From NCBI RefSeq assembly GCF_037042905.1, contig NC_087249.1, positions 27,652,001 through 27,716,000 of the forward strand: a stretch of DNA of 64,000 nt, written 5' to 3'. The notes under the pieces were generated by a model that saw only the letters and a program-made list of their open reading frames with translations, was not told where the DNA came from and made no database searches. Both the position numbers and the translations under genes were made by a program. How positions within the stretch are numbered: position 1 is the stretch's first letter; each line of letters begins with the position of its first letter. This document shows, piece by piece, positions 12,101 to 23,933 of this stretch. The stretch is from Lytechinus pictus. Its lineage: Eukaryota.

Positions 12101-15100
12101 CCAAGCTGTCGACAAACTACTCTAGCATCATAAACATCCCAACTGTCATCACAGACTGTACCCCACAAGCCATCGTGGAAGATCTCTACCCGACCTTGGT
12201 TTGGAGTGGGGCCCTCAACAAGACGGACATCACCTTCTGTACCATCTTTGAAAAGAAAACGATTTGCAGTATATCCATTCATAATGGGCATCAATAATTG
12301 AAAATGGCAAACATGCGTACATGAAACCATCTTACAAGGTGTTGAGGATTATTCATTGTATAAAGAATTATGTCTACATGTAAACGAATCATGGTAAAAG
12401 TCTCACACATAAACGAACATTGTATAAGATTGCACTAACGTACAGTATCTCTTTTCAAAATAAGAATGATGGAATATTATAAGCGTCAATCAAAGTATAG
12501 AAACATAATGGTCTTTGATTCCGTCCTAAATGCAATATTTGATCCATGAAATGTAATGAGCTTTAAAATGAGGACAAAATGAGAAAAAATAAATGATAGT
12601 TTATTGTAAAGAAAGATGGTCTACAAACAAACCTTGGCAGGTCACACCAGCATCACTCTCGTGTCCACAGAAGTTGTTGTCCCAACCGTCGATCTGGCAT
12701 AAATCCAACCGAGTTTCGTTTCCTTCACAGTCAACGTAATCAAGGTGTATGGGGCAAGATCCTTCTGGATATTTTCCACCGTTCCAAGCTCCACCAATGT
12801 TGTTTGAGTATCCAAGCTGTCGACAAACTACTCTAGCATCATAAACATCCCAACTGTCATCACAGACTGTACCCCACAAGCCATCGTGGAAGATCTCTAC
12901 CCGACCTTGGTTTGGAGAGGGACCATCAACTAGGCGGATATCACCTTCTGTACCATCTTTGGAAAGAAAACGATTACCAGTATATCTATTTATGATCATT
13001 ATTTCTTTACAAGCATGAACTCGAATTGTGTGAACAGGTTTCTTAATTTATTAACGAATGTAATTCATGTAATTCAATAGAATCACATTAGTTTTCGCAG
13101 GTGATAGGTAGTTCTATTTGTAATCTCTCTCAGTGTCGATATGACATTAGATTGAAAGTCTAAAGTCCGCCACAAGATACGTAGTTAATATTATCACGAA
13201 ACATAACATTTCATCAGATGAAATAAGATTTTAATCGTCAAATGAATTCGTTTATCAACATGAGATCCAAGGTGTTTATTTCGCAGTATAACAATTAAAA
13301 AAAATACTTAAAGGACAAGTCGCAAAAAAGGACAATCTGAGTTTCGGAAGGGTATTGAAAAAGGAAATAAATGTATCACGAGCTAAAAAAAAAAAAAAAA
13401 AAAAAACCTTGGCAGATAACACCAGCATCACTCTCGTGTCCACAGAAGTTGTTATCCCAACCGTCGCTCTGGCATAAATCCAACCGAGTTTCGTTTCCTT
13501 CACAGTCAACGTAATCAAGGTGTATGGGGCCAGATCCTTCTGGATATTTTCCACCGTTCCAAGCTCCACCAATGTTGTTTGAGTATCCAAGCTGTCGACA
13601 AACTACTCTAGCATCATAAACATCCCAACTGTCATCACAGACTGTACCCCACAAGCCATCGTGGAAGATCTCTACCCGACCTTCGTTTGGAGTGGGGCCA
13701 TCAGCAAGGCGGATATCACCTTCTGTGCCATCTTTGAAAAGAAAACGTTGAGCAGTATATGCAGTATATTCACTCATAATCACTCTTTTCACCGTATTCA
13801 AATCACACTTTAAAATTGCATTGTTGTGATAAGAAAGATGGGCATCAATGATTGAAAATGGCAAACATGCGTACATGAAACCAATCTTACAAGGTGTTGA
13901 GGATTATTCATTGTATAAAGAATTATGTCTACATGTAAACGAATCATGGTAAAAGTCTCACACATAAACGAACATTGTATAAGATTGCACTAACGTACAG
14001 TATCACTTTTCAAAATAAGAATGATGGAATATTATAAGCGTCAATCAAAGTATAGAAACATAATGGTCTTTGATTCCGTCCTAAATGCAATATTTGATCC
14101 ATGAAATGTAATGAGCTTTAAAATGAGTACAAAATGAGAAAAAATAAATGATAGTTTATTGAAAAGAAAGATGGTCTAAAAACAAACCTTGGCAGATTAC
14201 ACCAGCATCACTCTCGTGTCCACAGAAGTTGTTGTCCCAACCGTCGGTCTGGCATAAATCCAACCGAGTTTCGTTTCCTTCACAGTCAACGTAATCAAGG
14301 TGTATGGGGCCAGATCCCTCTGGATATTTTCCACCGTTCCAAGCTCCACCAATGTTGTTTGAGTATCCAAGCTGTCGACAAACTACTCTAGCATCATAAA
14401 CATCCCAACTGTCATCACAGACTGTACCCCACAAGCCATCGTGGAAGATCTCTACCCGACCTTGGTTTGGAGTAGGACCATGAGAAAGACGGACATCACC
14501 TTCTGCGCCATCTTTGTAAAAAAAATCGAATAGCCGTATAATCGTTTACAATCTCAACATAATTATATTATGTTCTAATAAAAAGATGATTCCTGATTCA
14601 CTTGTAATTTTGCCCAAGATTGCCAAAAGACAGAGGATAAATCAAGTTTCCTCTGTTTTTAAGATGATGTGATCAAAATCCTTCCCCAAAAATCACGTTC
14701 AGTTTACTTGACTGACGACACCTAGACAAACTTGAGCAATTACCCATGAGAGACTACTATTGTTAATATAATACGTAAAGGAGCACCGAACCCCATTTTC
14801 AAAGTACATGTATGAGTTTTAGGACAGGAATAATCATTGCAACGATAGTCAACAAATAGGGTACTCAAAAAATAAAGATGTATGAGTGTCAGTTACCAAC
14901 CTTGACAAATAACACCGGCATCTTCCGAATGTCCGCAGTTCTGAATATCCCAGCCGTTGCTCTTGCATAAATCCAACCTAGTTTCATTTCCCTCGCAGGC
15001 GACGTCATCAAGGTGTATGGGGCCTGATCCCCTCGGATATTTTCCACCAGCCCAGGCTCCACCAATGTTGTTTGAGTATCCAAGCTGTCGACAAACTACT

Positions 15101-18100
15101 CTAGCATCATAAACATCCCAACTGTCATCACAGACTGTACCCCACAAGCCATCGTGGAAGATCTCTACCCGACCTTGGTTTAGAGTGGGGCCCATAACAA
15201 GACGGACATCCCCCTCTTTTTCAAATTCTGAAAAGAAACGATAGAAACCTGCTTTTCACTGCATACCTTATCTCAGGACTAAGAATTTTCCCATATCAAA
15301 ATATCCTGGTGCAGCCCCCTATCAAAATATCATGGTGCTGCCCCTATCAAAATATCATGGTGCAGCCACCTATCAAAATATCATGGTGCAGTCCCCTATC
15401 AAAATATCCTGGTGCTGCCCCTATCAACATATGTTGGCGCCGCCCTTTAAAGGACAAGTCCATCCCAACAAAAAATTGATTTGATTAAAAAGAGAAAAAT
15501 CGAACAAGCACAGCATTGAAAATTTCATCAAAATCGAATGTCAAATAAGAAAGTTATGACATTTTAAAGTTTCGCTTAATTTCACAAAACAGTTATATGC
15601 ACATCCTGGTTAGTATGCAAATGAGGAGAGTGATGAGATCATCCACTCACTATTTATTTTGTTTTTTGTTCATATGAAATGTGAAATATTCTAATTATCT
15701 CCTCATTGTCAAGTGAACATGTGGAATAAGCATTGCTTAATACTTTATGATTCAGTAAAGTTGGTCCATATGGTCAAATCTGTAAATAATGAAATATTGT
15801 ATAATTCAAACAATAAAAAACAAAAGAAATAGTGAGTGATTGACATCATCGACTGAGTCGACTGACTCATTTGCATGTCACTGAGTTGTGCATATCACAT
15901 AATTTTTATCATAGTTGTGCATATTACATGATTTTCTTTGGTCCTGAACTCTCTCTCCCCCTCCATCTCTCTCTCTCTCTCTCTCCCTCTCTTACCATGT
16001 TCTTTTACTTTCTCATTCTGAGTCTTATTTTTATGTGCATATATGTCTTCTTTACTTATGTTTTCTTTATGTTATGAATTGTATGTTTTTAGACAGGCAG
16101 AGCCCTGTGGAAGACCAGCGATTTTTTTTAATGAACGTTTTAATTGTATATATTGTGTAATTTTACATATTTGTTTGTACAAAGCTGAACAGGCTCCACT
16201 GGTTAAAGATTTGAAATAAATGAATAAAAATAAATAAATAAAATCACTGTTTTGTGAAAAATAAGCGAAACTTTAAAATACCATAACTTTCTTATTTTAC
16301 ATCCGATTTTGATGAAATTTTCAGTATTATGCCAGTTTGATTTTTCTCTATATATGTATTCAAATAAACATTTTGCTGGGGTGGACTTGACCTTTAACAA
16401 AATATCCTGGCGCCACTTCGTTTTTGTAGGGCCTGTTACAACCGATAACGTCGCAGCAACGCATAATAATGTCGCAGGGAAATGGCATTATGCGATGATC
16501 ATCCAACGCATAATGTCGCAGCGGTATTCGATTCGATATGTTTTCTTTCAGTAATTTGTTTAAAGGAGAATGAAACCCTTGAAACCAGCTGAATCCATAT
16601 CAATGAGAAAAATCAAAGAAACATATTGTTGAAAGTTTGAGGAAGATTGAATGAATGATAAGAAAGTTATGAGCATTTGAATATTGAGATCACTAGTGCC
16701 ATGTAGATCCTCCCATCGGCAATGCGACCAAGATCTGTGATATCACACACGTACAACTCCCTCATTACTTTAGTACTTATTTCACGTATATTCTCACTTT
16801 TATAGAGTCTATCACAAGGTGAGGTGTTCTCTTTATGAGATGACAAGTACAGAGGTTTCACAACATTATATCATTGATGAATCGTTTGTCATATGATTAG
16901 AATGAGCAAAAAGAGATGTTTTGGGGTATATTTTCAGTGTCCAAATGGGGGAGTTGTACGTGTGTGACATCACAGATCTTGGTCGCATTGCCAATGGGAG
17001 GATCTCCATAGCATTAGTGATCTCGACATTCAAATGCTCATAACTCTTCTATTGCTAGTCCTATTTTACTCAAAGTTTTGTTGATCTTATTCTTTGATTT
17101 TTCTGCTTTCACAAAAGCTAACTTGCTCCAAGAGTTTCATTCTCCTTTAAGCTCTGTCATCTGAACAATTTTAAACTGTTGGTGGGGCAGGCGCAGATGC
17201 AGGAGAGGGGGCAGTATCCAATTCATTATCTGGAGGAGGCGTTTGACTAAAAAAAACATGTATTGTGTGGACTAGTGAAACGCAAGTATACGCATACCAC
17301 CATTTATCTGCACATATTGCTATATACATGTATGTAATTAAGCACATTTCCATGGTCTTTTACAGACAATTTCAAATACAAATTTAATTACAATTCATTG
17401 TTGTTCATGAGATTTTAAGAAAGAAATTATATTTCGTATTGTTACTCGGAATTTACCATAAGAAATTCGGCGCGCGATTCTCACTCGCATATCTTTTATA
17501 TAGGTCTATAATGCCCAATACTGCTCAGAATGTTCAAATTTTGGGTCTAAATCGCCGGCGGGCGTAAATCCCGGGGGATGGGGGATACATTCCCCAAACA
17601 CTTTTCGGAGAGGGGGATGGCATGTACAATCATCCCCCCCCCCCCACTTTTCAAGATAGAAAAAAACAATTTTAATCATCAAATGGTTAATACCATGTTA
17701 ATATGTGAATTCATCTTTAAATGCTATCAAAGTGCTTAAATTGGCCAAATTTTCCATTCTAAAATTGCAAAATTTCTCGCGCGGTCGCTCCGCTCCCGCA
17801 ATCAATCGATTCTTACAAGAATTTGGCCATGACAAATCTTGAGTTCAGCTTATAGCAAAGGTTATTTCCACTGCATCATGGGAGTTAAGTTATAATTAGT
17901 CCATTTCTGAATATGTGATTCCAATTACTTTTAAATATGATTATAACTTATCATAACGAATAAAAATATCCTTTAAATACACTCTCGTGAATATGGGGGG
18001 ATTACCTGGTATCTTTGTGGAAGCGGGGGATTCTGTTTAAAAAAATATTTGGCCTAACGTATTCTTCAAGTTAAGGGTACGATGAGTCATTGGTAATATT

Positions 18101-20841
18101 GATCAAATCAATGCCGTTGATAAAACACTAATATTCGCTCAAAATATCGAATGTTGCATCATCTCCCAATATAATCTTATAGATTATTCGAATCTTTCCT
18201 TGTCATATGCAATTTCATTGTGATATTACCACTTTTTGGAAGTTTATATTGTGGCCTGTGATGGCCTATGATCATTTCAAATGGCACCCTTATTTTTGTT
18301 TTCATTCTCATCTCACTTTATCCAGTGAGCAAATAAGTTTTCATTGAACAAAACTCGACTATTTAATCCCTAATAGCTCTCTTTATATTATTTTTTGTTC
18401 ACATTCTTCTAAAGTTTACGTTATTGATAATACCCTTATCATCATCATTTTAAACGACTGAAACTACTTTTTTAAGGCTCATTAACTACGCTCACCGCCT
18501 CAATTTCTCCCATAATTACACTCCTTGATTTTGTTATCATTCTGTCTTTCAAGGGCTATGGAAAATTTGCTCGCTCGCTTCGCTCACTCGCATTTGGACA
18601 TAACTGTAATTCAGTAGTATGCATCGCAACAAATCCATTACGCACTATGGATATGTAAGCCCGAAAATGTTCCACGCTTATTTTTGGAAACGATGCAATT
18701 GCAAATATAATTTAAGTTGCTATATAAATTTCGTTATTTTTCACTCGTGCACAAAAAGGCTGTATTTGCATTGCAGTGTTTTGTTCGCAAACATGCATGT
18801 ACAAGCACTCATTGACATGGTTGATGATCTTTGACAAAATGCATATATATCCCCCACTGACATTGACTGAGTGAGACCTCTATCTATTATATTATCTCTC
18901 TCCAAAACGGGTCATTACATCAAAGGCAGTAACTACAGTATTTAGTCTACATGTATATGCAAAGACTAACTTTGATCATCTAGAGGGTTTTCATGCAGAG
19001 AAGCCTGCATGGAGTTTCTTCTTGTTTCACACAGAAAAAAGTAGAAGGGAGGAGGAAAAAGAAGAAGAAGAAAAAGAAGAAGAAGAATTAGAAGGTGATG
19101 ATGATGATGATGATGATGAAGCTCAGAGGAGGAGAAGGAGGAGCAGAGGGAGAAACGGGAAGATGAAGACGAAAAAATCAAATGCGCAGTAAACACTATT
19201 ATGCTTTCCAGTTTGTCTATAGCAGATTGAGTTTTAATTTTATTTCGCCCAACAATGGAAGTGCCGGATATGAATTATCTTCTTTGATAGATAAAATAAA
19301 GTTGTTCATTATTTTATTGGATATAAAAGGATCTGCTTCTGTTAAAAATGATGTATCCCAAAAAGTATGTCCCTATAGATAGAAATCTTTATCAATTAAC
19401 ATCGTGACACAAATCATGTATGAATTTAAAGAGATTGGTAAGTAAAACCATTCCAATAGCCCGGATGGATGATTTACCGGACTCTGATTCGAAAATAAGT
19501 TTGGAAGGTAGATATGGATAAGATCCACATCCTGACAATAGAGAGTTTTCACAACTGCAATGGAGACAGAATCAAGAACACGGTAAATATATTGGGAATG
19601 CCCGCCAAATGACAAAAAGCAGCTGGGAGGTTTTTGTCGAGAACTGGTGAACCGGAACGGCAGTTTCGCCCTAAGTTTCGGAACTGACGAAAAACTGCAA
19701 ATATGTCGTTTGTCCAGAGTCTAAGACGAAACTTCTGGGGGGGGGGGGGTTATTCATCAATTATCGACAAAGATTTTTTGGTTGTGGCATTCGACAATGC
19801 ATTGTTTTTTATCCTTCGTGCATCGAGAAAGCAAAAACTACCTAATCTTACTACTTCGTTTCCCCGCAATCAGGTGCGCAGGTGACGCCGAATTATGCTT
19901 ATAAACCCATGAATTGAATGAAAACGAAAGCTTGGACGAACATCCAAGAGGAATTAAAATATAGAAGAGGAGGGAGACGGTGTTTTCAATTCAGTTTTTG
20001 CACAAGATATTCATAAGCAAATAGACAAAGTTCAACCAAATATTGATCCATGCTAATGATGCTGCATGCATTTGTGCAATGCTGCTGAACGTCATCTCTA
20101 AAACTGTGAGTCTCTGCAACATGCAATAAGTTGAAAGAAACGTTAGCTAGAACTAGTAGAGTAAAAAAAAACGACGTTCGCTAAGTTGTGGACCTATAAC
20201 AAGTCGTGCCCATATACGCAGGACTATTATTTTGCATGGTGGTTAGCAATTGGAAAGTAGAATTTATTAAAAACAATTAAAAGACCTCAGCCACAAGTCC
20301 TCTTTCTCTCAATATTTTTAGGAGAAACACTTATATTTTCCTGTCTTCCTGCACATTCAAACCTCCTTTGTCTACGTTTAGTTCCTACTATGTATTATTA
20401 TCTGCATATGTAACACTATTTTGTTGTAAATGTGAATACTCTAATGGTAAAATAAATTAAACAAAACAAAAAGTCCTTGTACCCGGACTATCCGTTTACT
20501 AAAGCGTTTTTTTTTCTTCATAAATAGATTCCTGAGGCATAGTAATTAGAACATATAAACCACAAGTCACAGAAAAATGATAGATTACATTTTAGGTTTC
20601 TGCAGCATTTCCCCCATCATGACCCACCTCCGCATTGACGTTTACAATATTTATGACAACCACATCTTTTCATAGTTTACTAATGCGTAAATTTGGTCCA
20701 AGCTGTGAGAATGATAGCAATATTGAGCAAAATATATTTGGACAACCAAAAATCACTGCTATACAAACACCTCTCTATGTTGTGTTTATAGTTTAGGCAT
20801 TGTAAGAGATGTGAATATTTCTTTTACAATGACATTAAGTG

Positions 20842-20919
<78 letters not shown>

Positions 20920-21173
20920 GGTAGATATTCCACGTGTTGGAGTAATATTAAGAGAAACAAGGTTGAAACTTTCATGCTTTAATCCAACAAAATTAAGTCC
21001 ACAAATTTTCGACGAGTACATACCGTCTTTACCGTACTTTATCGAGTACATACCGTCTTTATCAGTTTCACTTGATAAAGACTGTATGTACTCGTCGAAA
21101 ATTTGTGGACTTCAATAAATTTTGTTGGATTAAAGCATGAAAGTTTCATACTTGTTTCTCTTATATAACCATG

Positions 21174-21209
<36 letters not shown>

Positions 21210-21332
21210 AATAATTCATTGGTTGGATTGCTTAACTAAGCTAGTCGTACAGACTGTTTCACCCTAAGGCTCATCAGCGAATCACAGTCGAGCACTATTA
21301 GATATTGCAGTATATCACTATATACTTACCTA

Positions 21333-21368
<36 letters not shown>

Positions 21369-21519
21369 TCATGAAATTTTCTGTCTCTGATTTTTGGTTC
21401 TTTTGACAGTCTGTAATGCTGTCAAATGACCATGACTTGGCCAGTTTATTAAGTGAAGTAAAACTTTAGAAAAATGGGGGTCGGATGTACAAAAGGGCTG
21501 ATCATTTTATGGAATTGCC

Positions 21520-21555
<36 letters not shown>

Positions 21556-23385
21556 ATTTTAAAAAACACGACCCAGATATCTATCACAAAATTTGATTTT
21601 TGTGATAACAAATTTCGAATGCTTTGCTCGCTCGCAACTTGTTGTTATTGTTACCCGATACGTTTTATCTAGTCCCCTCAAATTTCTGGCTCATTACGCC
21701 ACTTTTAAAGTGTGAGAGCGAAAAACAAGCGAGCAAACTGTCACTATCTGATAGGGTCTATGGTGTCAAATTGTATCTTGTACAATGGGTTTGAGCATTA
21801 GAGACTGAAAATATATTTATTTCAACAAAATCTAGTAAGCACCATCCTAGCGAGTGTTGTGAGCTAACTTAAAAGAATTGCTGGGGGGGGGTTCAAATTA
21901 GGGGGAATTATGAGGAAGAAAGGGGATACTTAGCAGGAAAATGATCACTCGGGGAGGGCCATTGACTCACTTAAGATGAATTGGAAGACGGCAGACCCTA
22001 TACTTTGAGAAGGAAAGATTGGATCTTATCACCAAGAAAATGGTGCCCCTATTTGATTATAACTAGGCATTTGGGGCACTTATTATAGAGATCATAATAT
22101 AATCCTGGAAAACTAGGAGCTGCACCCAAATTAAAACGTGTAGCTCAACAGTGTGACAAGTAAGGAAGCATACGATATTATGTAGAAAGTTGCATTTTAT
22201 CGTATCTACCATGTCTACAGAGTATCAGTGGAAATGGGGTAAAGGTATGAAACTTAATGATGACAATGATGTCTCAGTTGAACAATTTCTTTGTCGCTGA
22301 CACAAAAAGGATTGTATTTCTCTTCCTGATACCATTAAATTGACCTATTTAACTCGCAAATATGTGGTCTGCACCGCTGTCTTTTAGATCTATTTAGTCG
22401 GTCATGCTTGTCATCAGTGGTACAGTTAACTACTGTAAATGTAAATTAAACATGTTTAAGAATTTGATCTGGCACACTGTTGTAAATTTAGCTATGAATA
22501 TCTACCCTTTAGATCTAAATTGCATTTGTGTATCTATATCCTCAAGCTAACGGTGTATGTATTTAGTAACTGTTCACATGGCTAGTCTGAAGTGTTTTTT
22601 TTTATAAACAAGTCCACACCTTGGCCTCCAAGAATGCATATAGCATTTCCATTTAGGCCTTATTTGAACATGCAGGATGAATAGCACTGTCGATTAAATG
22701 CCTTGCTCATGGATAATACTAGGTGCCGTGGTCGGGGATCGAACCTCGGATTTTGTCTAGTGGGCGAATTAAACCGCTCGGCCACGGCACCTCCGCGGCG
22801 TTTTATTTGGGTGGTGTTTTTTTTTGTAACAGGTAAGGAAGATCAATCGGCTCCTAAATTTTTGGAAGTGATGTAGCGTTTGTGTTTTAAAAGGGGCAGC
22901 ACGACATAGGCTTATATGACTTGCTACATTCCACTCAATGTGATTTTGCCGTTCTTCTAATATTCTGTTTTATCAAAAGCTGAAAGGTCTCACAAGAAAT
23001 TGACCTAAAATAAAAATATTATCGGAGCAACCCAGATATTGGCCTATATCTATTTTCATAGCAGTATATATCAAATGATAAATCGATATATGACTATACA
23101 GGTCTCCATGGTGGCATATATATTATATATATATCATAACCTTGTTCATTGAATGAGTGCATGGTGGTGCTCATCAGGAGATATCACTATTAATGGTACT
23201 GTAATTCAATGACAGTACAGTGAAAATTGAGTGAACTGTAAATCCAACAGACCTCAATCCAGTTAGAAACTCGTGTGTTACTTACGACATTGTACGAAGG
23301 TTGGACAGAAAACAGCGATAAGAGGCAATATCCATAGTTGACTTCTCCACACTAGTTTCCCTCCAACGGCAGGCGACGCCATCAT
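1..23385 (-). CDS. Multi-domain SRCR scavenger receptor (DMBT1-like), spliced gene: signal-peptide exon + at least 18 SRCR exons; 3' end beyond left window edge
   Basis: Repeated GRVEI..WGTVCDD.W...[20 protein letters not shown]....W....C.H.EDAGV.C motifs. Each lies in a 324-333 nt exon with AG/GT boundaries, all phase 1-1, giving a continuous reading frame when joined. Confidence 0.95.
359..691 (-). CDS. SRCR exon/domain 17
   Basis: AAG acceptor, GTGAGT donor, 333 nt. Confidence 0.9.
1530..1859 (-). CDS. SRCR exon/domain 16
   Basis: CAG acceptor, GTGAGT donor, 330 nt. Confidence 0.92.
2014..3290 (+). mobile_element. Degenerate Ty3/Gypsy LTR retrotransposon remnant (putative 5' LTR 2014-2222, PBS, pol RNase H to integrase-proximal fragment) in an SRCR intron, antisense to the host gene
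   Basis: RT-RNaseH motifs [43 protein letters not shown], then DTLSR and IRNGWPE, broken by frameshifts and stops. TG start where homology to the paralogous intron (~5400) stops. TGGTGTCAG PBS-like sequence at 2223. Confidence 0.85.
3293..3545. mobile_element. Small palindromic MITE-like element (left end truncated)
   Basis: caatcgtaactctatgga ... tccatagttacgattg inverted repeats; right terminus tttgtaagacggggccctg. Confidence 0.55.
3850..4176 (-). CDS. SRCR exon/domain 15
   Basis: TAG acceptor, GTCAGT donor, 327 nt. Confidence 0.92.
4934..5263 (-). CDS. SRCR exon/domain 14
   Basis: AAG acceptor, GTAAGT donor, 330 nt. Confidence 0.92.
5866..6195 (-). CDS. SRCR exon/domain 13
   Basis: TAG acceptor, GTATGT donor, 330 nt. 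Confidence 0.92.
6440..6769 (-). CDS. SRCR exon/domain 12
   Basis: TAG acceptor, GTAATT donor, 330 nt. Confidence 0.92.
7252..7578 (-). CDS. SRCR exon/domain 11
   Basis: AAG acceptor, GTAGGT donor, 327 nt. Confidence 0.92.
7721..7901. mobile_element. Palindromic MITE (~180 bp; GG..CC ends, possibly PIF/Harbinger-type)
   Basis: gtttcatagagctgttcgtaagttaggagcga ... gtcactcttaacttacgaatagctttataaaac long inverted repeat. Confidence 0.65.
8445..8774 (-). CDS. SRCR exon/domain 10
   Basis: AAG acceptor, GTAAGT donor, 330 nt. Confidence 0.92.
9045..9371 (-). CDS. SRCR exon/domain 9
   Basis: AAG acceptor, GTATGT donor, 327 nt. Confidence 0.92.
9656..9979 (-). CDS. SRCR exon/domain 8
   Basis: AAG acceptor, GTTTGT donor, 324 nt. 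Confidence 0.9.
10395..10718 (-). CDS. SRCR exon/domain 7
   Basis: AAG acceptor, GTTTGT donor, 324 nt. Confidence 0.9.
11160..11483 (-). CDS. SRCR exon/domain 6
   Basis: AAG acceptor, GTTTTT donor, 324 nt. Confidence 0.9.
11922..12245 (-). CDS. SRCR exon/domain 5
   Basis: AAG acceptor, GTTTTT donor, 324 nt. Confidence 0.9.
12633..12956 (-). CDS. SRCR exon/domain 4 (extra Cys, EGSCP)
   Basis: AAG acceptor, GTTTGT donor, 324 nt. Confidence 0.9.
13408..13731 (-). CDS. SRCR exon/domain 3
   Basis: AAG acceptor, GTTTTT donor, 324 nt. Confidence 0.9.
14188..14511 (-). CDS. SRCR exon/domain 2
   Basis: AAG acceptor, GTTTGT donor, 324 nt. Confidence 0.9.
14901..15227 (-). CDS. SRCR exon/domain 1
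   Basis: TTTTCAG acceptor, GTTGGT donor, 327 nt, full SRCR motif. Confidence 0.92.
15290..15446. repeat. ~26-bp minisatellite (cctatcaaaatatcctggtgcagcc) x6, interrupted by a MITE
   Basis: Direct repeats visible; the unit resumes (caaaatatcctggcgcc) at 16398, after the MITE. Confidence 0.85.
15451..16393. mobile_element. Kolobok/T2-type MITE family A, copy 1, carrying a ~345-bp nested LINE-like 3' tail (~15900-16243)
   Basis: TTAA TSD, AGGACAAGTCCA..TGGACTTGACCT TIRs; homologous to 59934-60543 and 61376-61965, which lack the insert. Confidence 0.85.
16564..17146. mobile_element. Kolobok/T2-type MITE family B
   Basis: TTAA TSD, AGGAGAATGAAAC..GTTTCATTCTCCT TIRs, ~95-bp internal inverted repeats. 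Confidence 0.85.
19040..19170. repeat. Compound (GAA)n/(TGA)n/(GGA)n microsatellite
   Basis: Direct reading. Confidence 0.85.
20948..21165. mobile_element. Inverted-repeat remnant in (TA)n, probably a Penelope-like element pseudo-LTR pair with a variant small hammerhead motif
   Basis: ~90-bp arms (aagagaaacaag..gacgagtacataccgtcttta / taaagactgtatgtactcgtc..cttgtttctctt). The right arm reads CAC-TTGATAAA-GAC..GTC-GAAA-ATTT-GTG. Confidence 0.55.
21245..21281 (-). ncRNA. Minimal type I hammerhead ribozyme motif
   Basis: Minus strand: uUCG-CUGAUGA-GCC-uuag-GGU-GAAA-CAGUCUG-UA^CGA. Complete catalytic core, stem II, short near-palindromic stem III, GUA cleavage triplet, 3-bp stem I. Confidence 0.7.
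22650..22794 (-). mobile_element. tRNA-derived SINE
   Basis: Minus strand: A box GTGGCCGAGCGGT, B box GGTTCGATCCC, followed by a SINE core-like TCCATGAGCAAGGCATTTAA. Confidence 0.75.
23286..23385 (-). CDS. SRCR gene exon 1, signal peptide [33 protein letters not shown]
   Basis: ATG ATG start, hydrophobic core, strong GTAAGT donor in phase 1 that matches the phase of the first SRCR exon (C|AA = Gln). Confidence 0.8.
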
Positions 23386-23525
23386 TTCACGTGCAATGTC
23401 AACGGTGCCATGCGATCAAACCCATACGTAGGCGAAAATTAGCTCTCGTAAATAATGTATGGGATGGTTGCATGCACATTTGCAATAGAGAAAAGGAAGC
23501 AGAGGAAAGCCGTCGGTCGACTGTG

Positions 23526-23796
23526 TTTATACAGTAATCAAAGTATTTTTTTTCAATACTGAAAATATTCTGGTATTGTGTGACGTCATAGCTTTCACGG
23601 TTGTTGGGTCCAAAATGGGGACCGTCATGCCAAACTTTCTTTCTCATTAAAAGGCGTTGGTAAATAATGATGGAATATTCCATCATTAGTCTCTGTCATT
23701 TTTCAGAGTCGATGTGCCTACACTCAGTAAAAGATTTACATGAAAAATACTGGTAATTTAGCTAAATTCCTTTTCATGTATGCCCAGGAATGTCCC
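23526..23796 (-). promoter_or_regulatory. Putative SRCR gene promoter: TATAAA (23526-23531), CRE TGACGTCA (23581-23588), kB-like GGGACATTCC (23787-23796)
   Basis: Consensus motif matches 140-410 bp upstream of the ATG; motif matches only. Confidence 0.45.
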
Positions 23797-23933
23797 CAGC
23801 TTAAAGCAAAAAGGAAATATGGCTTCACAATCATGGTGATAAATACTCATATTTTCAACAAAATTATAAATTAATGCAAAGAGCAAAATGATCATTTGAT
23901 TGTTAGTATAATCAGACTGTTTATTTTACAGTG
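23721..23933. mobile_element. Short CACT..AGTG-ended MITE (CMC/EnSpm-like), degenerate
   Basis: cactcagtaaaa ... ttttacagtg termini. Confidence 0.45.

What the first reader, a model, noticed from the sequence alone, without database searches (positions are those of the whole stretch)
21245..21281. Hammerhead ribozyme motif, sense-oriented, inside intron 1 of an immune-type SRCR receptor gene
Seen: the minus strand (same strand as the SRCR pre-mRNA) reads UCG-CUGAUGA-GCC(uuag)GGU-GAAA-CAGUCUG-UA-CGA. This is a complete hammerhead core with stem II, a tiny near-palindromic stem III, a GUA cleavage triplet and a short stem I, sitting between (TA)n tracts. Known: minimal type I hammerheads of this shape are carried by Penelope-like retroelements and often cleave as dimers through the palindromic stem III. 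Inference: if active, it could cut the nascent SRCR transcript ~2 kb after exon 1 and tune receptor expression. The G-U pair closing stem II and the 3-bp stem I suggest partial decay.
Basis: partly seen in the sequence, partly recalled or inferred. Interest (0 to 1): 0.72.

Follow-up and report, generated by a model that had tools for sequence, protein, structure and literature searches.

The report
Truncated Penelope retroelement hammerhead relic
The hammerhead ribozyme motif is real, but it is the cut-off tail end of a young Penelope-like jumping gene that landed in a TA repeat inside intron 1 of an SRCR gene; this copy has lost half of one helix and almost certainly does not cut the host transcript.

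Summary
A spliced contig joins exon 1 (ends 23286) to exon 2 (starts 15227).

It is not a chance motif or a host device. It is the ribozyme module of a young retroelement family: 81 copies of the 37-nt module in the genome, 54 exact, 0 for a reversed control. Longer copies encode RT plus a C-terminal GIY-YIG nuclease with DKT and CxCX5C motifs. They insert in (TA)n and form head-to-head pairs, which are the published features of the Hydra clade of Penelope-like elements (PLEs). Nine relatives from other animals carry a type I hammerhead at the same 3'-UTR position, with covarying stems.

The window copy is a roughly 130-bp dead-on-arrival insertion: a 54-nt inverted "tail" plus the last 75 nt of the element. 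Truncation, not decay, left 3 of the 5+5 bp of stem I. The G-U pair is the family consensus. The inverted tail forms a competing helix (-18.0 versus -0.7 kcal/mol for the ribozyme fold), and the window holds no partner for dimer cleavage. RNA reads on the motif come from other copies.

This is a known kind of element, and the scan has noted such hammerheads in this genome before. Regulation of the SRCR gene is not supported.

The parts
21245..21280 (-). Hammerhead module: 3 nt left of the stem I 5' strand (UCG), core CUGAUGA, stem II GCC/GGU with loop UUAG, GAAA, near-palindromic stem III ACAGUCUGU, GUA site (cut predicted between 21248 and 21247), and the stem I 3' strand CGA.
   Evidence: sequence; identical to the 54-copy family consensus over 37 nt; same architecture in 9 related elements.
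21206..21280 (-). Segment B: the last 75 nt of the Penelope-like element (hammerhead plus about 40 nt ending TTATTTATA). It differs from the consensus at one base, G21217, which turns AATAAA into AATGAA.
21281..21282 (-). 2-nt filler (AT) at the junction between the inverted tail and segment B. This junction is unique to this locus.
   Evidence: the other tail-plus-B composites have different junction sequences.
21283..21336 (-). Segment A: the element's 3' 'tail' extension (part of the pseudo-LTR) in inverted orientation. Its GUGC..GACUGU pairs with ACAGUC..GUAC of the hammerhead.
   Evidence: the tail follows B in about 25 copies and always ends ..ACTTACCTA. (in relative L090 the tail lies between the hammerhead and the ORF start). 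(competing helix).
21337..21365 (.). (TA)n microsatellite flank. This is the target site, so no target-site duplication can be read. Bounds are approximate.
21164..21205 (.). (TA)n microsatellite flank on the other side of the insert. Bounds are approximate.
23286..23385 (-). Host gene exon 1 coding part: ATG at 23385, signal-peptide-like sequence, GT donor at 23285-23284.
   Evidence: sequence. X1 contig covers 23286-23360 and then continues into exon 2 sequence.
14893..15227 (-). Host gene exon 2, the first SRCR domain. It is preceded by a polypyrimidine tract and a CAG acceptor.
   Evidence: and 74 (PF00530, E 7.5e-31).

Best explanation
The motif is the ribozyme module of a Penelope-like retroelement (PLE) of the Hydra clade. 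The window holds a severely 5'-truncated, dead-on-arrival insertion of about 130 bp in a (TA)n microsatellite in intron 1 of an SRCR gene.

How it arose (inferred from PLE biology):
1. The element's GIY-YIG nuclease nicked the TA repeat.
2. Its reverse transcriptase copied the RNA from the 3' end.
3. Copying ended at the 5' edge of the hammerhead. This is a hot spot where 45 of 71 copies end.
4. An inverted piece of the 3' tail was joined on the other side. This is the head-to-head arrangement typical of PLE insertions.

In intact elements the hammerhead lies 120-190 nt after the stop codon, inside the pseudo-LTR. It is a conserved, selected structure. By published hypothesis it processes multimeric PLE transcripts as a dimer through its near-palindromic stem III.

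In this copy the ribozyme is predicted to be inert:
- Only 3 bp of stem I survive.
- The distal helix and internal loop needed for tertiary contacts are gone.
- The inverted tail sequesters stem III and the cleavage site.
- No partner copy exists in the pre-mRNA.

It is a neutral intronic relic, not a regulator of the receptor gene.
For: Family:
- 81 copies of the 37-nt module, 54 exact, control 0.
- At least 49 matches to a 563-nt 3' part at 97-98% identity, with variable 5' truncation and a shared 3' end.
- Head-to-head inverted pairs.
- Ends in (TA)n.
- One copy with a 12-bp target-site duplication enclosing element plus tail.

Coding capacity of copy L034:
- In-frame DKT.
- RT motifs FDVVNFYPSI and YRDDGL.
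- Linker CNCRKTEDC, which fits CxCX5C.
- GIY-YIG (VIYKAKV..YIGLT).
- CNLC and CRH motifs.
- Nearest Atlas clusters carry RVT_1, GIY-YIG and HTH_animal.
- 3643 homologues with E <= 1e-5; the best-scoring full-length ones are about 700 aa.
- These features match the published Hydra clade description (PMC8557442).

Ribozyme authenticity:
- Nine relatives (a bryozoan, corals and unidentified assemblies) each have a type I hammerhead 64-190 nt after the stop codon.
- Stems I and II covary (for example U-A to C-G between L092 and L095).
- Stem III is always a 9-10 nt near-palindrome.
- L090 and L092 show the hammerhead in both pseudo-LTR copies, about 2.44 kb apart.

This copy:
- Canonical copies read ..ACUAAUCAGUCG before the core, giving 5 bp, an internal loop and 5 bp of stem I.
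- The window has only UCG.
- The ribozyme fold scores -0.7 against an MFE of -18.0 kcal/mol in the window copy. The canonical copy scores -7.3 against -13.2, and its MFE is hammerhead-like.
- It is the only hammerhead-like motif in the window.
- A single min-hammerhead tested in vitro was inactive (PMC4209133).
- RNA reads over 21230-21280 continue at 21280 into canonical element sequence, and there is no pile of ends at 21247/8.
Against: - The catalytic core of this copy is intact and identical to the active family's consensus, so cleavage cannot be excluded by sequence alone. A 3-bp stem I can support slow cleavage in minimal hammerheads at high Mg2+ (general ribozyme knowledge).
- Folding energies are nearest-neighbour predictions and ignore co-transcriptional folding. 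The inverted tail is transcribed before the ribozyme, which if anything favours the competitor.
- The RNA test had little power. Only about 6% of each run was read, and the intron was essentially uncovered, so the gene may not be expressed in those samples.
- Pfam hmmscan gave no hit at all for the 571-aa ORF. The RT/GIY-YIG assignment therefore rests on motif reading, Atlas neighbours and the literature description.
- I did not recover a full-length copy of this family in this genome.
Confidence: 0.9

Rival explanations
1. Active intronic ribozyme. The motif self-cleaves the nascent SRCR pre-mRNA about 2 kb after exon 1 and tunes receptor expression.
For: - Sense orientation in intron 1 is confirmed.
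- The catalytic core is intact and identical to the family consensus.
- Sense intronic hammerheads with proposed regulatory roles exist in amniotes (cited in PMC4209133).
Against: - Stem I is reduced to 3 bp by truncation.
- A competing helix is about 17 kcal/mol more stable than the ribozyme fold.
- There is no dimer partner in the window.
- A single PLE min-hammerhead tested showed no detectable cleavage, and dimer and trimer constructs only low activity.
- There are no locus-specific reads and no RNA ends at the site.
- The insert is one of at least 8 independent tail-plus-B composites scattered over the genome, so nothing singles out this locus.
Confidence: 0.04
2. The roughly 130-bp tail-plus-hammerhead composite is itself a small non-autonomous mobile unit (retrozyme- or SINE-like) that is copied as such by the PLE machinery.
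For: - At least 8 loci share the arrangement of inverted tail followed by segment B.
- Animal retrozymes are proposed to be non-autonomous PLE derivatives (bioRxiv 10.64898/2026.07.22.740005).
Against: - The junction between tail and B differs in nearly every copy: AT filler, direct join, extra bases, or a short inverted B fragment. They are independent events, not descendants of one master.
- There are no tandem arrays.
- The arrangement is the extreme end of the inverted-pair series seen for longer copies.
Confidence: 0.04
3. Chance occurrence of the hammerhead consensus in AT-rich intronic DNA.
For: - The core pattern alone occurs at the chance rate.
- No Rfam hammerhead model reaches its threshold.
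Against: - 81 genomic copies against 0 for the control.
- Membership in an RT/GIY-YIG element.
- The same module, with covarying stems, at the same position in nine related elements.
Confidence: 0.01

Closest known systems
Minimal type I hammerheads (min-HHRs) in the pseudo-LTRs of metazoan Penelope-like elements (Cervera and de la Pena 2014, PMC4209133)
   Same: - Type I topology and CUGAUGA/GAAA core.
- Short helix I and a very short, near-palindromic helix III that implies dimer cleavage.
- Located in the pseudo-LTR near the 3' end.
- Many genomic copies are single motifs from truncated elements, or pairs on opposite strands 100-700 bp apart.
   Different: - Helix II here is short (GCC/GGU, which the pair count extends to 4 bp) rather than the 6-8 bp typical of the Schistosoma families.
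- The window copy lacks most of the helix I 5' strand.
Hydra clade of C-terminal EN+ Penelope-like elements (Craig et al. 2021, PMC8557442)
   Same: [quoted passage not shown]
- DKT instead of DKG, and a CxCX5C linker.
- CxxC and CxH motifs in the nuclease.
- Insertion into (TA)n and a canonical hammerhead near the 3' end.
- Relatives have a unit length of about 2.44 kb (under 3 kb).
- Tail extension and tandem or inverted insertion structures.
- The clade is reported in echinoderms.
   Different: - This particular sea-urchin family is not named in the text I read.
- The tail is 61-74 bp rather than 30-40 bp.
- No phylogeny was made here.
[quoted passage not shown]
   Same: A type I hammerhead in sense orientation inside an intron of a protein-coding gene.
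   Different: - Those are stable monomeric ribozymes with full helices, conserved across species at orthologous loci.
- This one is a young, truncated transposon fragment with no Rfam HH9/HH10 match and no sign of locus-specific conservation.
Animal non-LTR retrozymes (bioRxiv 10.64898/2026.07.22.740005)
   Same: Hammerhead-bearing short sequences related to PLE pseudo-LTRs.
   Different: Retrozymes are tandem arrays that give circular RNAs. The window has a single truncated module with an inverted tail and no tandem repeat.

Membership tests
Hammerhead ribozyme, type I (PLE min-HHR) | Conserved core: C3-U-G-A-N-G-A9, G12-A-A14, A15.1-U16.1 and a non-G at position 17 | tested here: met
   CUGAUGA ... 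GAAA ... GUA|C. The module is identical in 54 copies.
Hammerhead ribozyme, type I (PLE min-HHR) | Helix II closed by a loop | tested here: met
   GCC-UUAG-GGU (G-U, C-G, C-G). The pair count adds a U-A pair from the loop, giving 4 bp. Relatives covary: ACC/GGU in L090, and 6-11 bp helices in the others.
Hammerhead ribozyme, type I (PLE min-HHR) | Short helix III with a palindromic loop that allows a dimeric extended helix III | tested here: met
   ACAGUCUGU is self-complementary at 8 of 9 positions. All nine relatives have 8/9, 8/10 or 10/10.
Hammerhead ribozyme, type I (PLE min-HHR) | Helix I of about 4-6 bp (open ends), with distal elements for tertiary contacts | tested here: not met
   - The window copy has 3 bp (UCG/CGA), followed by a U-C mismatch.
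- Canonical family copies have 5 bp, an internal loop and 5 more bp.
- The family meets this feature; this copy does not.
Hammerhead ribozyme, type I (PLE min-HHR) | Match to Rfam hammerhead covariance models at the gathering score | tested here: not met
   - No hit at gathering score in the window.
- Best hit is Hammerhead_3 at 16.6 bits against 48.5, in a false type III register with G at position 17.
- The canonical copy gives RAGATH-1-hammerhead 14.6 bits against 56.3.
- Published searches for PLE min-HHRs used RNAmotif descriptors; I saw no Rfam models used for this.
Hammerhead ribozyme, type I (PLE min-HHR) | Self-cleavage 3' of position 17 | not testable with these tools
   - Indirect evidence only.
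- No pile of RNA ends at 21247/8 (low power).
- None of about 90 genomic copies starts exactly at the cleavage site.
Penelope-like element, Hydra clade | [quoted passage not shown] | tested here: met
   - Motifs were read in L034.
- Atlas neighbours carry RVT_1, GIY-YIG and HTH_animal.
- Homologues carry PF26215 or PF28514.
- Caveat: direct Pfam hmmscan gave no hit.
Penelope-like element, Hydra clade | DKT motif (in place of DKG) and a CxCX5C linker before GIY-YIG | tested here: met
   - PADKTNNFYS lies in frame 51 nt upstream of the listed ATG.
- CNCRKTEDC is present.
- Criteria are from PMC8557442.
Penelope-like element, Hydra clade | No CCHH motif inside GIY-YIG; CxxC and CxH motifs around the conserved E and N | tested here: inconclusive
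   CNLC..E and N..CRH are present. Absence of CCHH was judged by eye only, without an alignment to reference PLE nucleases.
Penelope-like element, Hydra clade | Insertion into (TA)n microsatellites | tested here: met
   Most copies, the window copy included, are flanked by (TA)n. The relatives also end in (TA)n.
Penelope-like element, Hydra clade | Short element (under 3 kb) with pseudo-LTRs and tandem or inverted insertion structures | tested here: inconclusive
   - Relatives L090 and L092 have a unit of about 2.44 kb with pseudo-LTRs.
- The own family shows inverted pairs and a tail.
- An X1 transcript contig is 2264 nt long.
- No full-length own-genome copy was recovered.

The most novel reading that the evidence does not exclude
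The 5' edge of the hammerhead is the dominant 5' end of retrocopies of this family. In 45 of 71 copies the 5' end lies within about 10 nt of CUGAUGA, peaking 3-5 nt upstream. No copy starts at the cleavage site.

This edge coincides with an initiator-like TCAGTY motif kept in several relatives (L090, L092). One reading is that transcription of the element starts at the first nucleotide of the ribozyme. The 'solo hammerhead' copies, the window's included, would then be full-length copies of a short pseudo-LTR transcript rather than random truncations.

That would place the ribozyme at the extreme capped 5' end of the PLE RNA, and would give a testable handle on the still unknown role of PLE hammerheads.
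Probability: 0.2. Interest if true: 0.4.

Novelty: already known. Interest (0 to 1): 0.12.

Why it matters
For the question asked it matters little. The motif is one more truncated copy of a known class: hammerhead-bearing Penelope-like retroelements of the Hydra clade. There is no evidence that it acts on the SRCR immune-type gene.

It is useful in three ways:
- **Annotation.** It explains the (TA)n-flanked insert and removes a tempting regulatory story.
- **Detection.** It documents that Rfam models miss these ribozymes.
- **Element biology.** It adds two small observations on PLEs: a sharp 5'-end hot spot at the ribozyme edge, and no retrocopies that begin at the cleavage site. Both bear on the open question of what PLE hammerheads do.

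Tried and rejected
- **Rfam.** Gathering mode on the window gave no hit. E-value mode on 21000-21500, on six canonical loci and on a 101-nt canonical slice gave only sub-threshold hammerhead hits. The 16.6-bit Hammerhead_3 hit uses a type III register (GACUGU/ACAGUC as helix III) with G at position 17 and no helix I. I reject it as a ribozyme. That same pairing is the competing helix.
- **Pfam.** hmmscan of the 571-aa ORF gave nothing, even at E 10.
- **PDB.** Sequence search gave only a marginal retron RT hit, E 0.7.
- **RNA reads.**
  - Three ribo-depleted runs, about 6% read each, left the intron essentially uncovered.
  - Reads on 21230-21280 belong to other copies, so there is no verdict on cleavage at this locus.
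  - No run is on record as an RNA holder of the stretch.
- **Footprint of cleaved templates.** The segment 3' of the cut has 83 copies against 81 for the core. The extra ones start inside the ribozyme or carry indels, and none starts at C1.1.
- **Composite as a mobile family.** Rejected because the junctions differ.
- **Not done.** I made no formal covariation count on a tool alignment, because helix II length varies from 4 to 11 bp. The pairings were computed by script instead.

Full report
**1. Observation**

On the minus strand, 21280..21245 reads UCG-CUGAUGA-GCC-UUAG-GGU-GAAA-CAGUCUG-UA-CGA. The insert is flanked by (TA)n on both sides.

The bare core pattern is not significant: 2 matches in the window against 2.08 expected. 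No Rfam hammerhead model reaches its gathering score. In E-value mode the only hammerhead hit is Hammerhead_3 at 16.6 bits against 48.5. That hit uses a type III register with G at position 17 and no helix I, so it is not a plausible ribozyme.

**2. Host gene context**

- ORFs at 14893-15195 and 14156-14434 (minus) are SRCR domains (PF00530, E 7.5e-31 and 2.5e-24).
- A signal-peptide-like exon starts at ATG 23385 and ends at 23286 before a GTAAGT donor.
- A contig of run X1 covers 23286-23360 and then continues with sequence found at 15198-15227. That sequence follows a polypyrimidine tract and a CAG acceptor.
- Intron 1 therefore spans 23285..15228, and the motif lies in sense about 2.0 kb into it.

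**3. It is a repeat**

- A 141-nt query around the motif has at least 63 matches in the 811-Mb genome. Many are 99% identical over the part from UCG to the (TA)n.
- The 37-nt module has 81 copies with up to 3 mismatches, 54 of them exact. The reversed control has 0.
- In canonical copies the sequence before the core is ..ACUAAUCAGUCG. Stem I is then 5 bp (AGUCG/CGACU), an internal loop, and 5 bp (ACUAA/UUAGU).
- A 563-nt 3' part has at least 49 matches at 97-98% identity. They are 5'-truncated at many different points and all reach the same 3' end. This is the hallmark of target-primed reverse transcription.
- Head-to-head inverted pairs are frequent.

**4. The element**

Longer copies share up to 1.53 kb. 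Copy L034 extends further and carries an ORF with these features:

- In-frame PADKTNNFYS.
- RT motifs FDVVNFYPSI and YRDDGL.
- A CNCRKTEDC linker.
- GIY-YIG (VIYKAKV..YIGLT).
- CNLC and CRH motifs.

Supporting and qualifying results:

- The stop codon lies about 270 nt before the 3' end. The hammerhead starts about 75 nt before it.
- L034 has a 12-bp target-site duplication that encloses the element and a 61-74-nt tail.
- Pfam hmmscan found nothing.
- The nearest Atlas clusters carry RVT_1, GIY-YIG and HTH_animal.
- There are 3643 homologues with E <= 1e-5; the best-scoring full-length ones are about 700 aa.
- Craig et al. 2021 define the Hydra clade of PLEs by a length under 3 kb, a C-terminal GIY-YIG, DKT, a CxCX5C linker, CxxC/CxH motifs, (TA)n targets and canonical hammerheads. 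They report it in echinoderms. They also describe tandem or inverted insertion structures and a terminal tail for PLEs in general. The family here fits on every point I could test.

**5. The ribozyme is a selected module of this clade**

I fetched nine related elements by their proteins (47-68% identity): a bryozoan, two corals and several unidentified assemblies.

- Each has a type I hammerhead 64-190 nt after the stop codon. Those whose downstream sequence I printed end in (TA)n.
- A script tabulated the helices. Helix I has 4-10 bp and helix II 4-11 bp, with different sequences.
- There are compensatory changes. For example, the third helix I pair is U-A in L092 and C-G in L095.
- Helix III is always a 9-10 nt near-palindrome: ACAGUCUGU, ACAGAUCUGU, ACUCCGAGU or ACUUUAAGU.
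- This is the dimer-competent design described for PLE min-hammerheads (PMC4209133).
- L090 and L092 carry the module in both pseudo-LTR copies, about 2.44 kb apart.
- In L090 the tail is the stretch between the hammerhead and the ORF start. The pseudo-LTR is therefore hammerhead plus end segment plus tail.

**6. Anatomy of the window copy**

Reading the minus strand:

- (TA)n.
- Segment A (21336..21283): the tail in inverted orientation, without its last 11 nt.
- A 2-nt filler, AT.
- Segment B (21280..21206): from UCG through the hammerhead to TTATTTATA.
- (TA)n.

At least eight other loci have an inverted tail joined to B, but with different junctions. They are independent insertion products, not a family of their own. 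B differs from the consensus at one base in 75, so the insert is young.

**7. Activity of this copy**

- Truncation removed all but 3 nt of the stem I 5' strand.
- ViennaRNA gives -0.7 kcal/mol for the ribozyme fold of the window copy. The MFE is -18.0 kcal/mol. In it, A's GUGC..GACUGU pairs with ACAGUC..GUAC and buries helix III and the cleavage site.
- The canonical copy scores -7.3 for the ribozyme fold against -13.2 for an MFE that already has helices I and II.
- The window contains no other hammerhead-like motif that could serve as a dimer partner.
- Cervera and de la Pena tested one min-hammerhead, from a Schistosoma PLE. The single motif showed no detectable self-cleavage, and dimer and trimer constructs showed only low activity.

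**8. RNA evidence**

- Three ribo-depleted RNA runs of the same species were laid on 18200-23900, with about 6% of each run read.
- The intron is essentially uncovered.
- Reads on 21230-21280 all continue at 21280 into the canonical 3'-UTR sequence of the element. They stem from other, transcribed copies.
- A 2264-nt contig of run X1 spans the hammerhead uncut.
- No pile of ends is seen at 21247/8.
- This is no evidence for cleavage at this locus, but the test had little power.

**9. Genomic footprints**

- Of 71 unique copies, 45 have their 5' end within about 10 nt of CUGAUGA, peaking 3-5 nt upstream. The other 26 run on into the 3' UTR.
- Truncation points elsewhere are about 100 times sparser per nucleotide.
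- The segment 3' of the cleavage site has 83 copies. None begins exactly at the cleavage site.
- Retrocopies therefore give no sign that cleaved RNAs serve as templates. The 5' edge of the ribozyme is a preferred end.
- That edge carries a TCAGTY motif that is also kept in several relatives (L090, L092). A transcription start there is one possible reading. I did not test it.

**10. Verdict**

The Penelope-like origin and the intronic sense position are right. The regulatory inference and the "decay" reading are not supported. The object is an ordinary, young, truncated insertion of a known class of retroelement.

Earlier notes of this scan describe the same kind of hammerhead-bearing Penelope-like insertions elsewhere in this genome, which they call a sea urchin. 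I did not verify the species.

Noticed in passing
window 21215-21220 (minus), G at 21217: The only difference between the window's segment B and the family consensus turns the element's AATAAA hexamer into AATGAA. In a sense-oriented intronic insert this would remove a potential premature poly(A) signal. One substitution in 75 nt may well be chance (about 8% to hit the hexamer).
   Followed up: partly
G000 copies in L012-L089, and relatives L090, L092, L094, L095 just 5' of the hammerhead core: 45 of 71 copies have their 5' end within about 10 nt of CUGAUGA. The edge carries an initiator-like TCAGTY motif that is also kept in relatives L090 and L092. It could be a transcription start or a template-switch hot spot.
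   Followed up: partly
window 21290-21297 (antisense in segment A); tails of L090-L094 and L098: A (T)TGAGCACT box in the tail or 5' UTR is kept in the sea-urchin family and in bryozoan and coral relatives, sometimes twice per element. It is a candidate cis element of Hydra-clade PLEs.
   Followed up: no
window 21001-21107: A roughly 105-nt near-perfect hairpin (inverted repeat) gives sub-threshold plant-miRNA hits in Rfam (MIR6020, E 3e-4). It looks like a small foldback or MITE-type repeat next to the TA tract.
   Followed up: no
window 21377-21449 and 23130-23160: Short stretches have very high RNA or contig depth (up to about 3900 in X1) and loose ends on both sides. They are pieces of other, highly expressed repeat families inside the intron.
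   Followed up: no
window 21254: About half of the minus-sense RNA reads of runs X6 and X7 carry U instead of G in helix III (ACAUUCUGU). This is an expressed subfamily or allele of the element with a weakened palindrome.
   Followed up: no
L017:2474-2545 (-) and L016:1257-1328 (+): tRNA genes (58 and 46 bits) lie within about 1 kb of two copies of the element.
   Followed up: no
window 21602 -> 18566: Three reads of run X8 join 21602 back to 18566, with 21 other letters in between. This could be a back-joint or a repeat artefact. Support is too thin to interpret.
   Followed up: no
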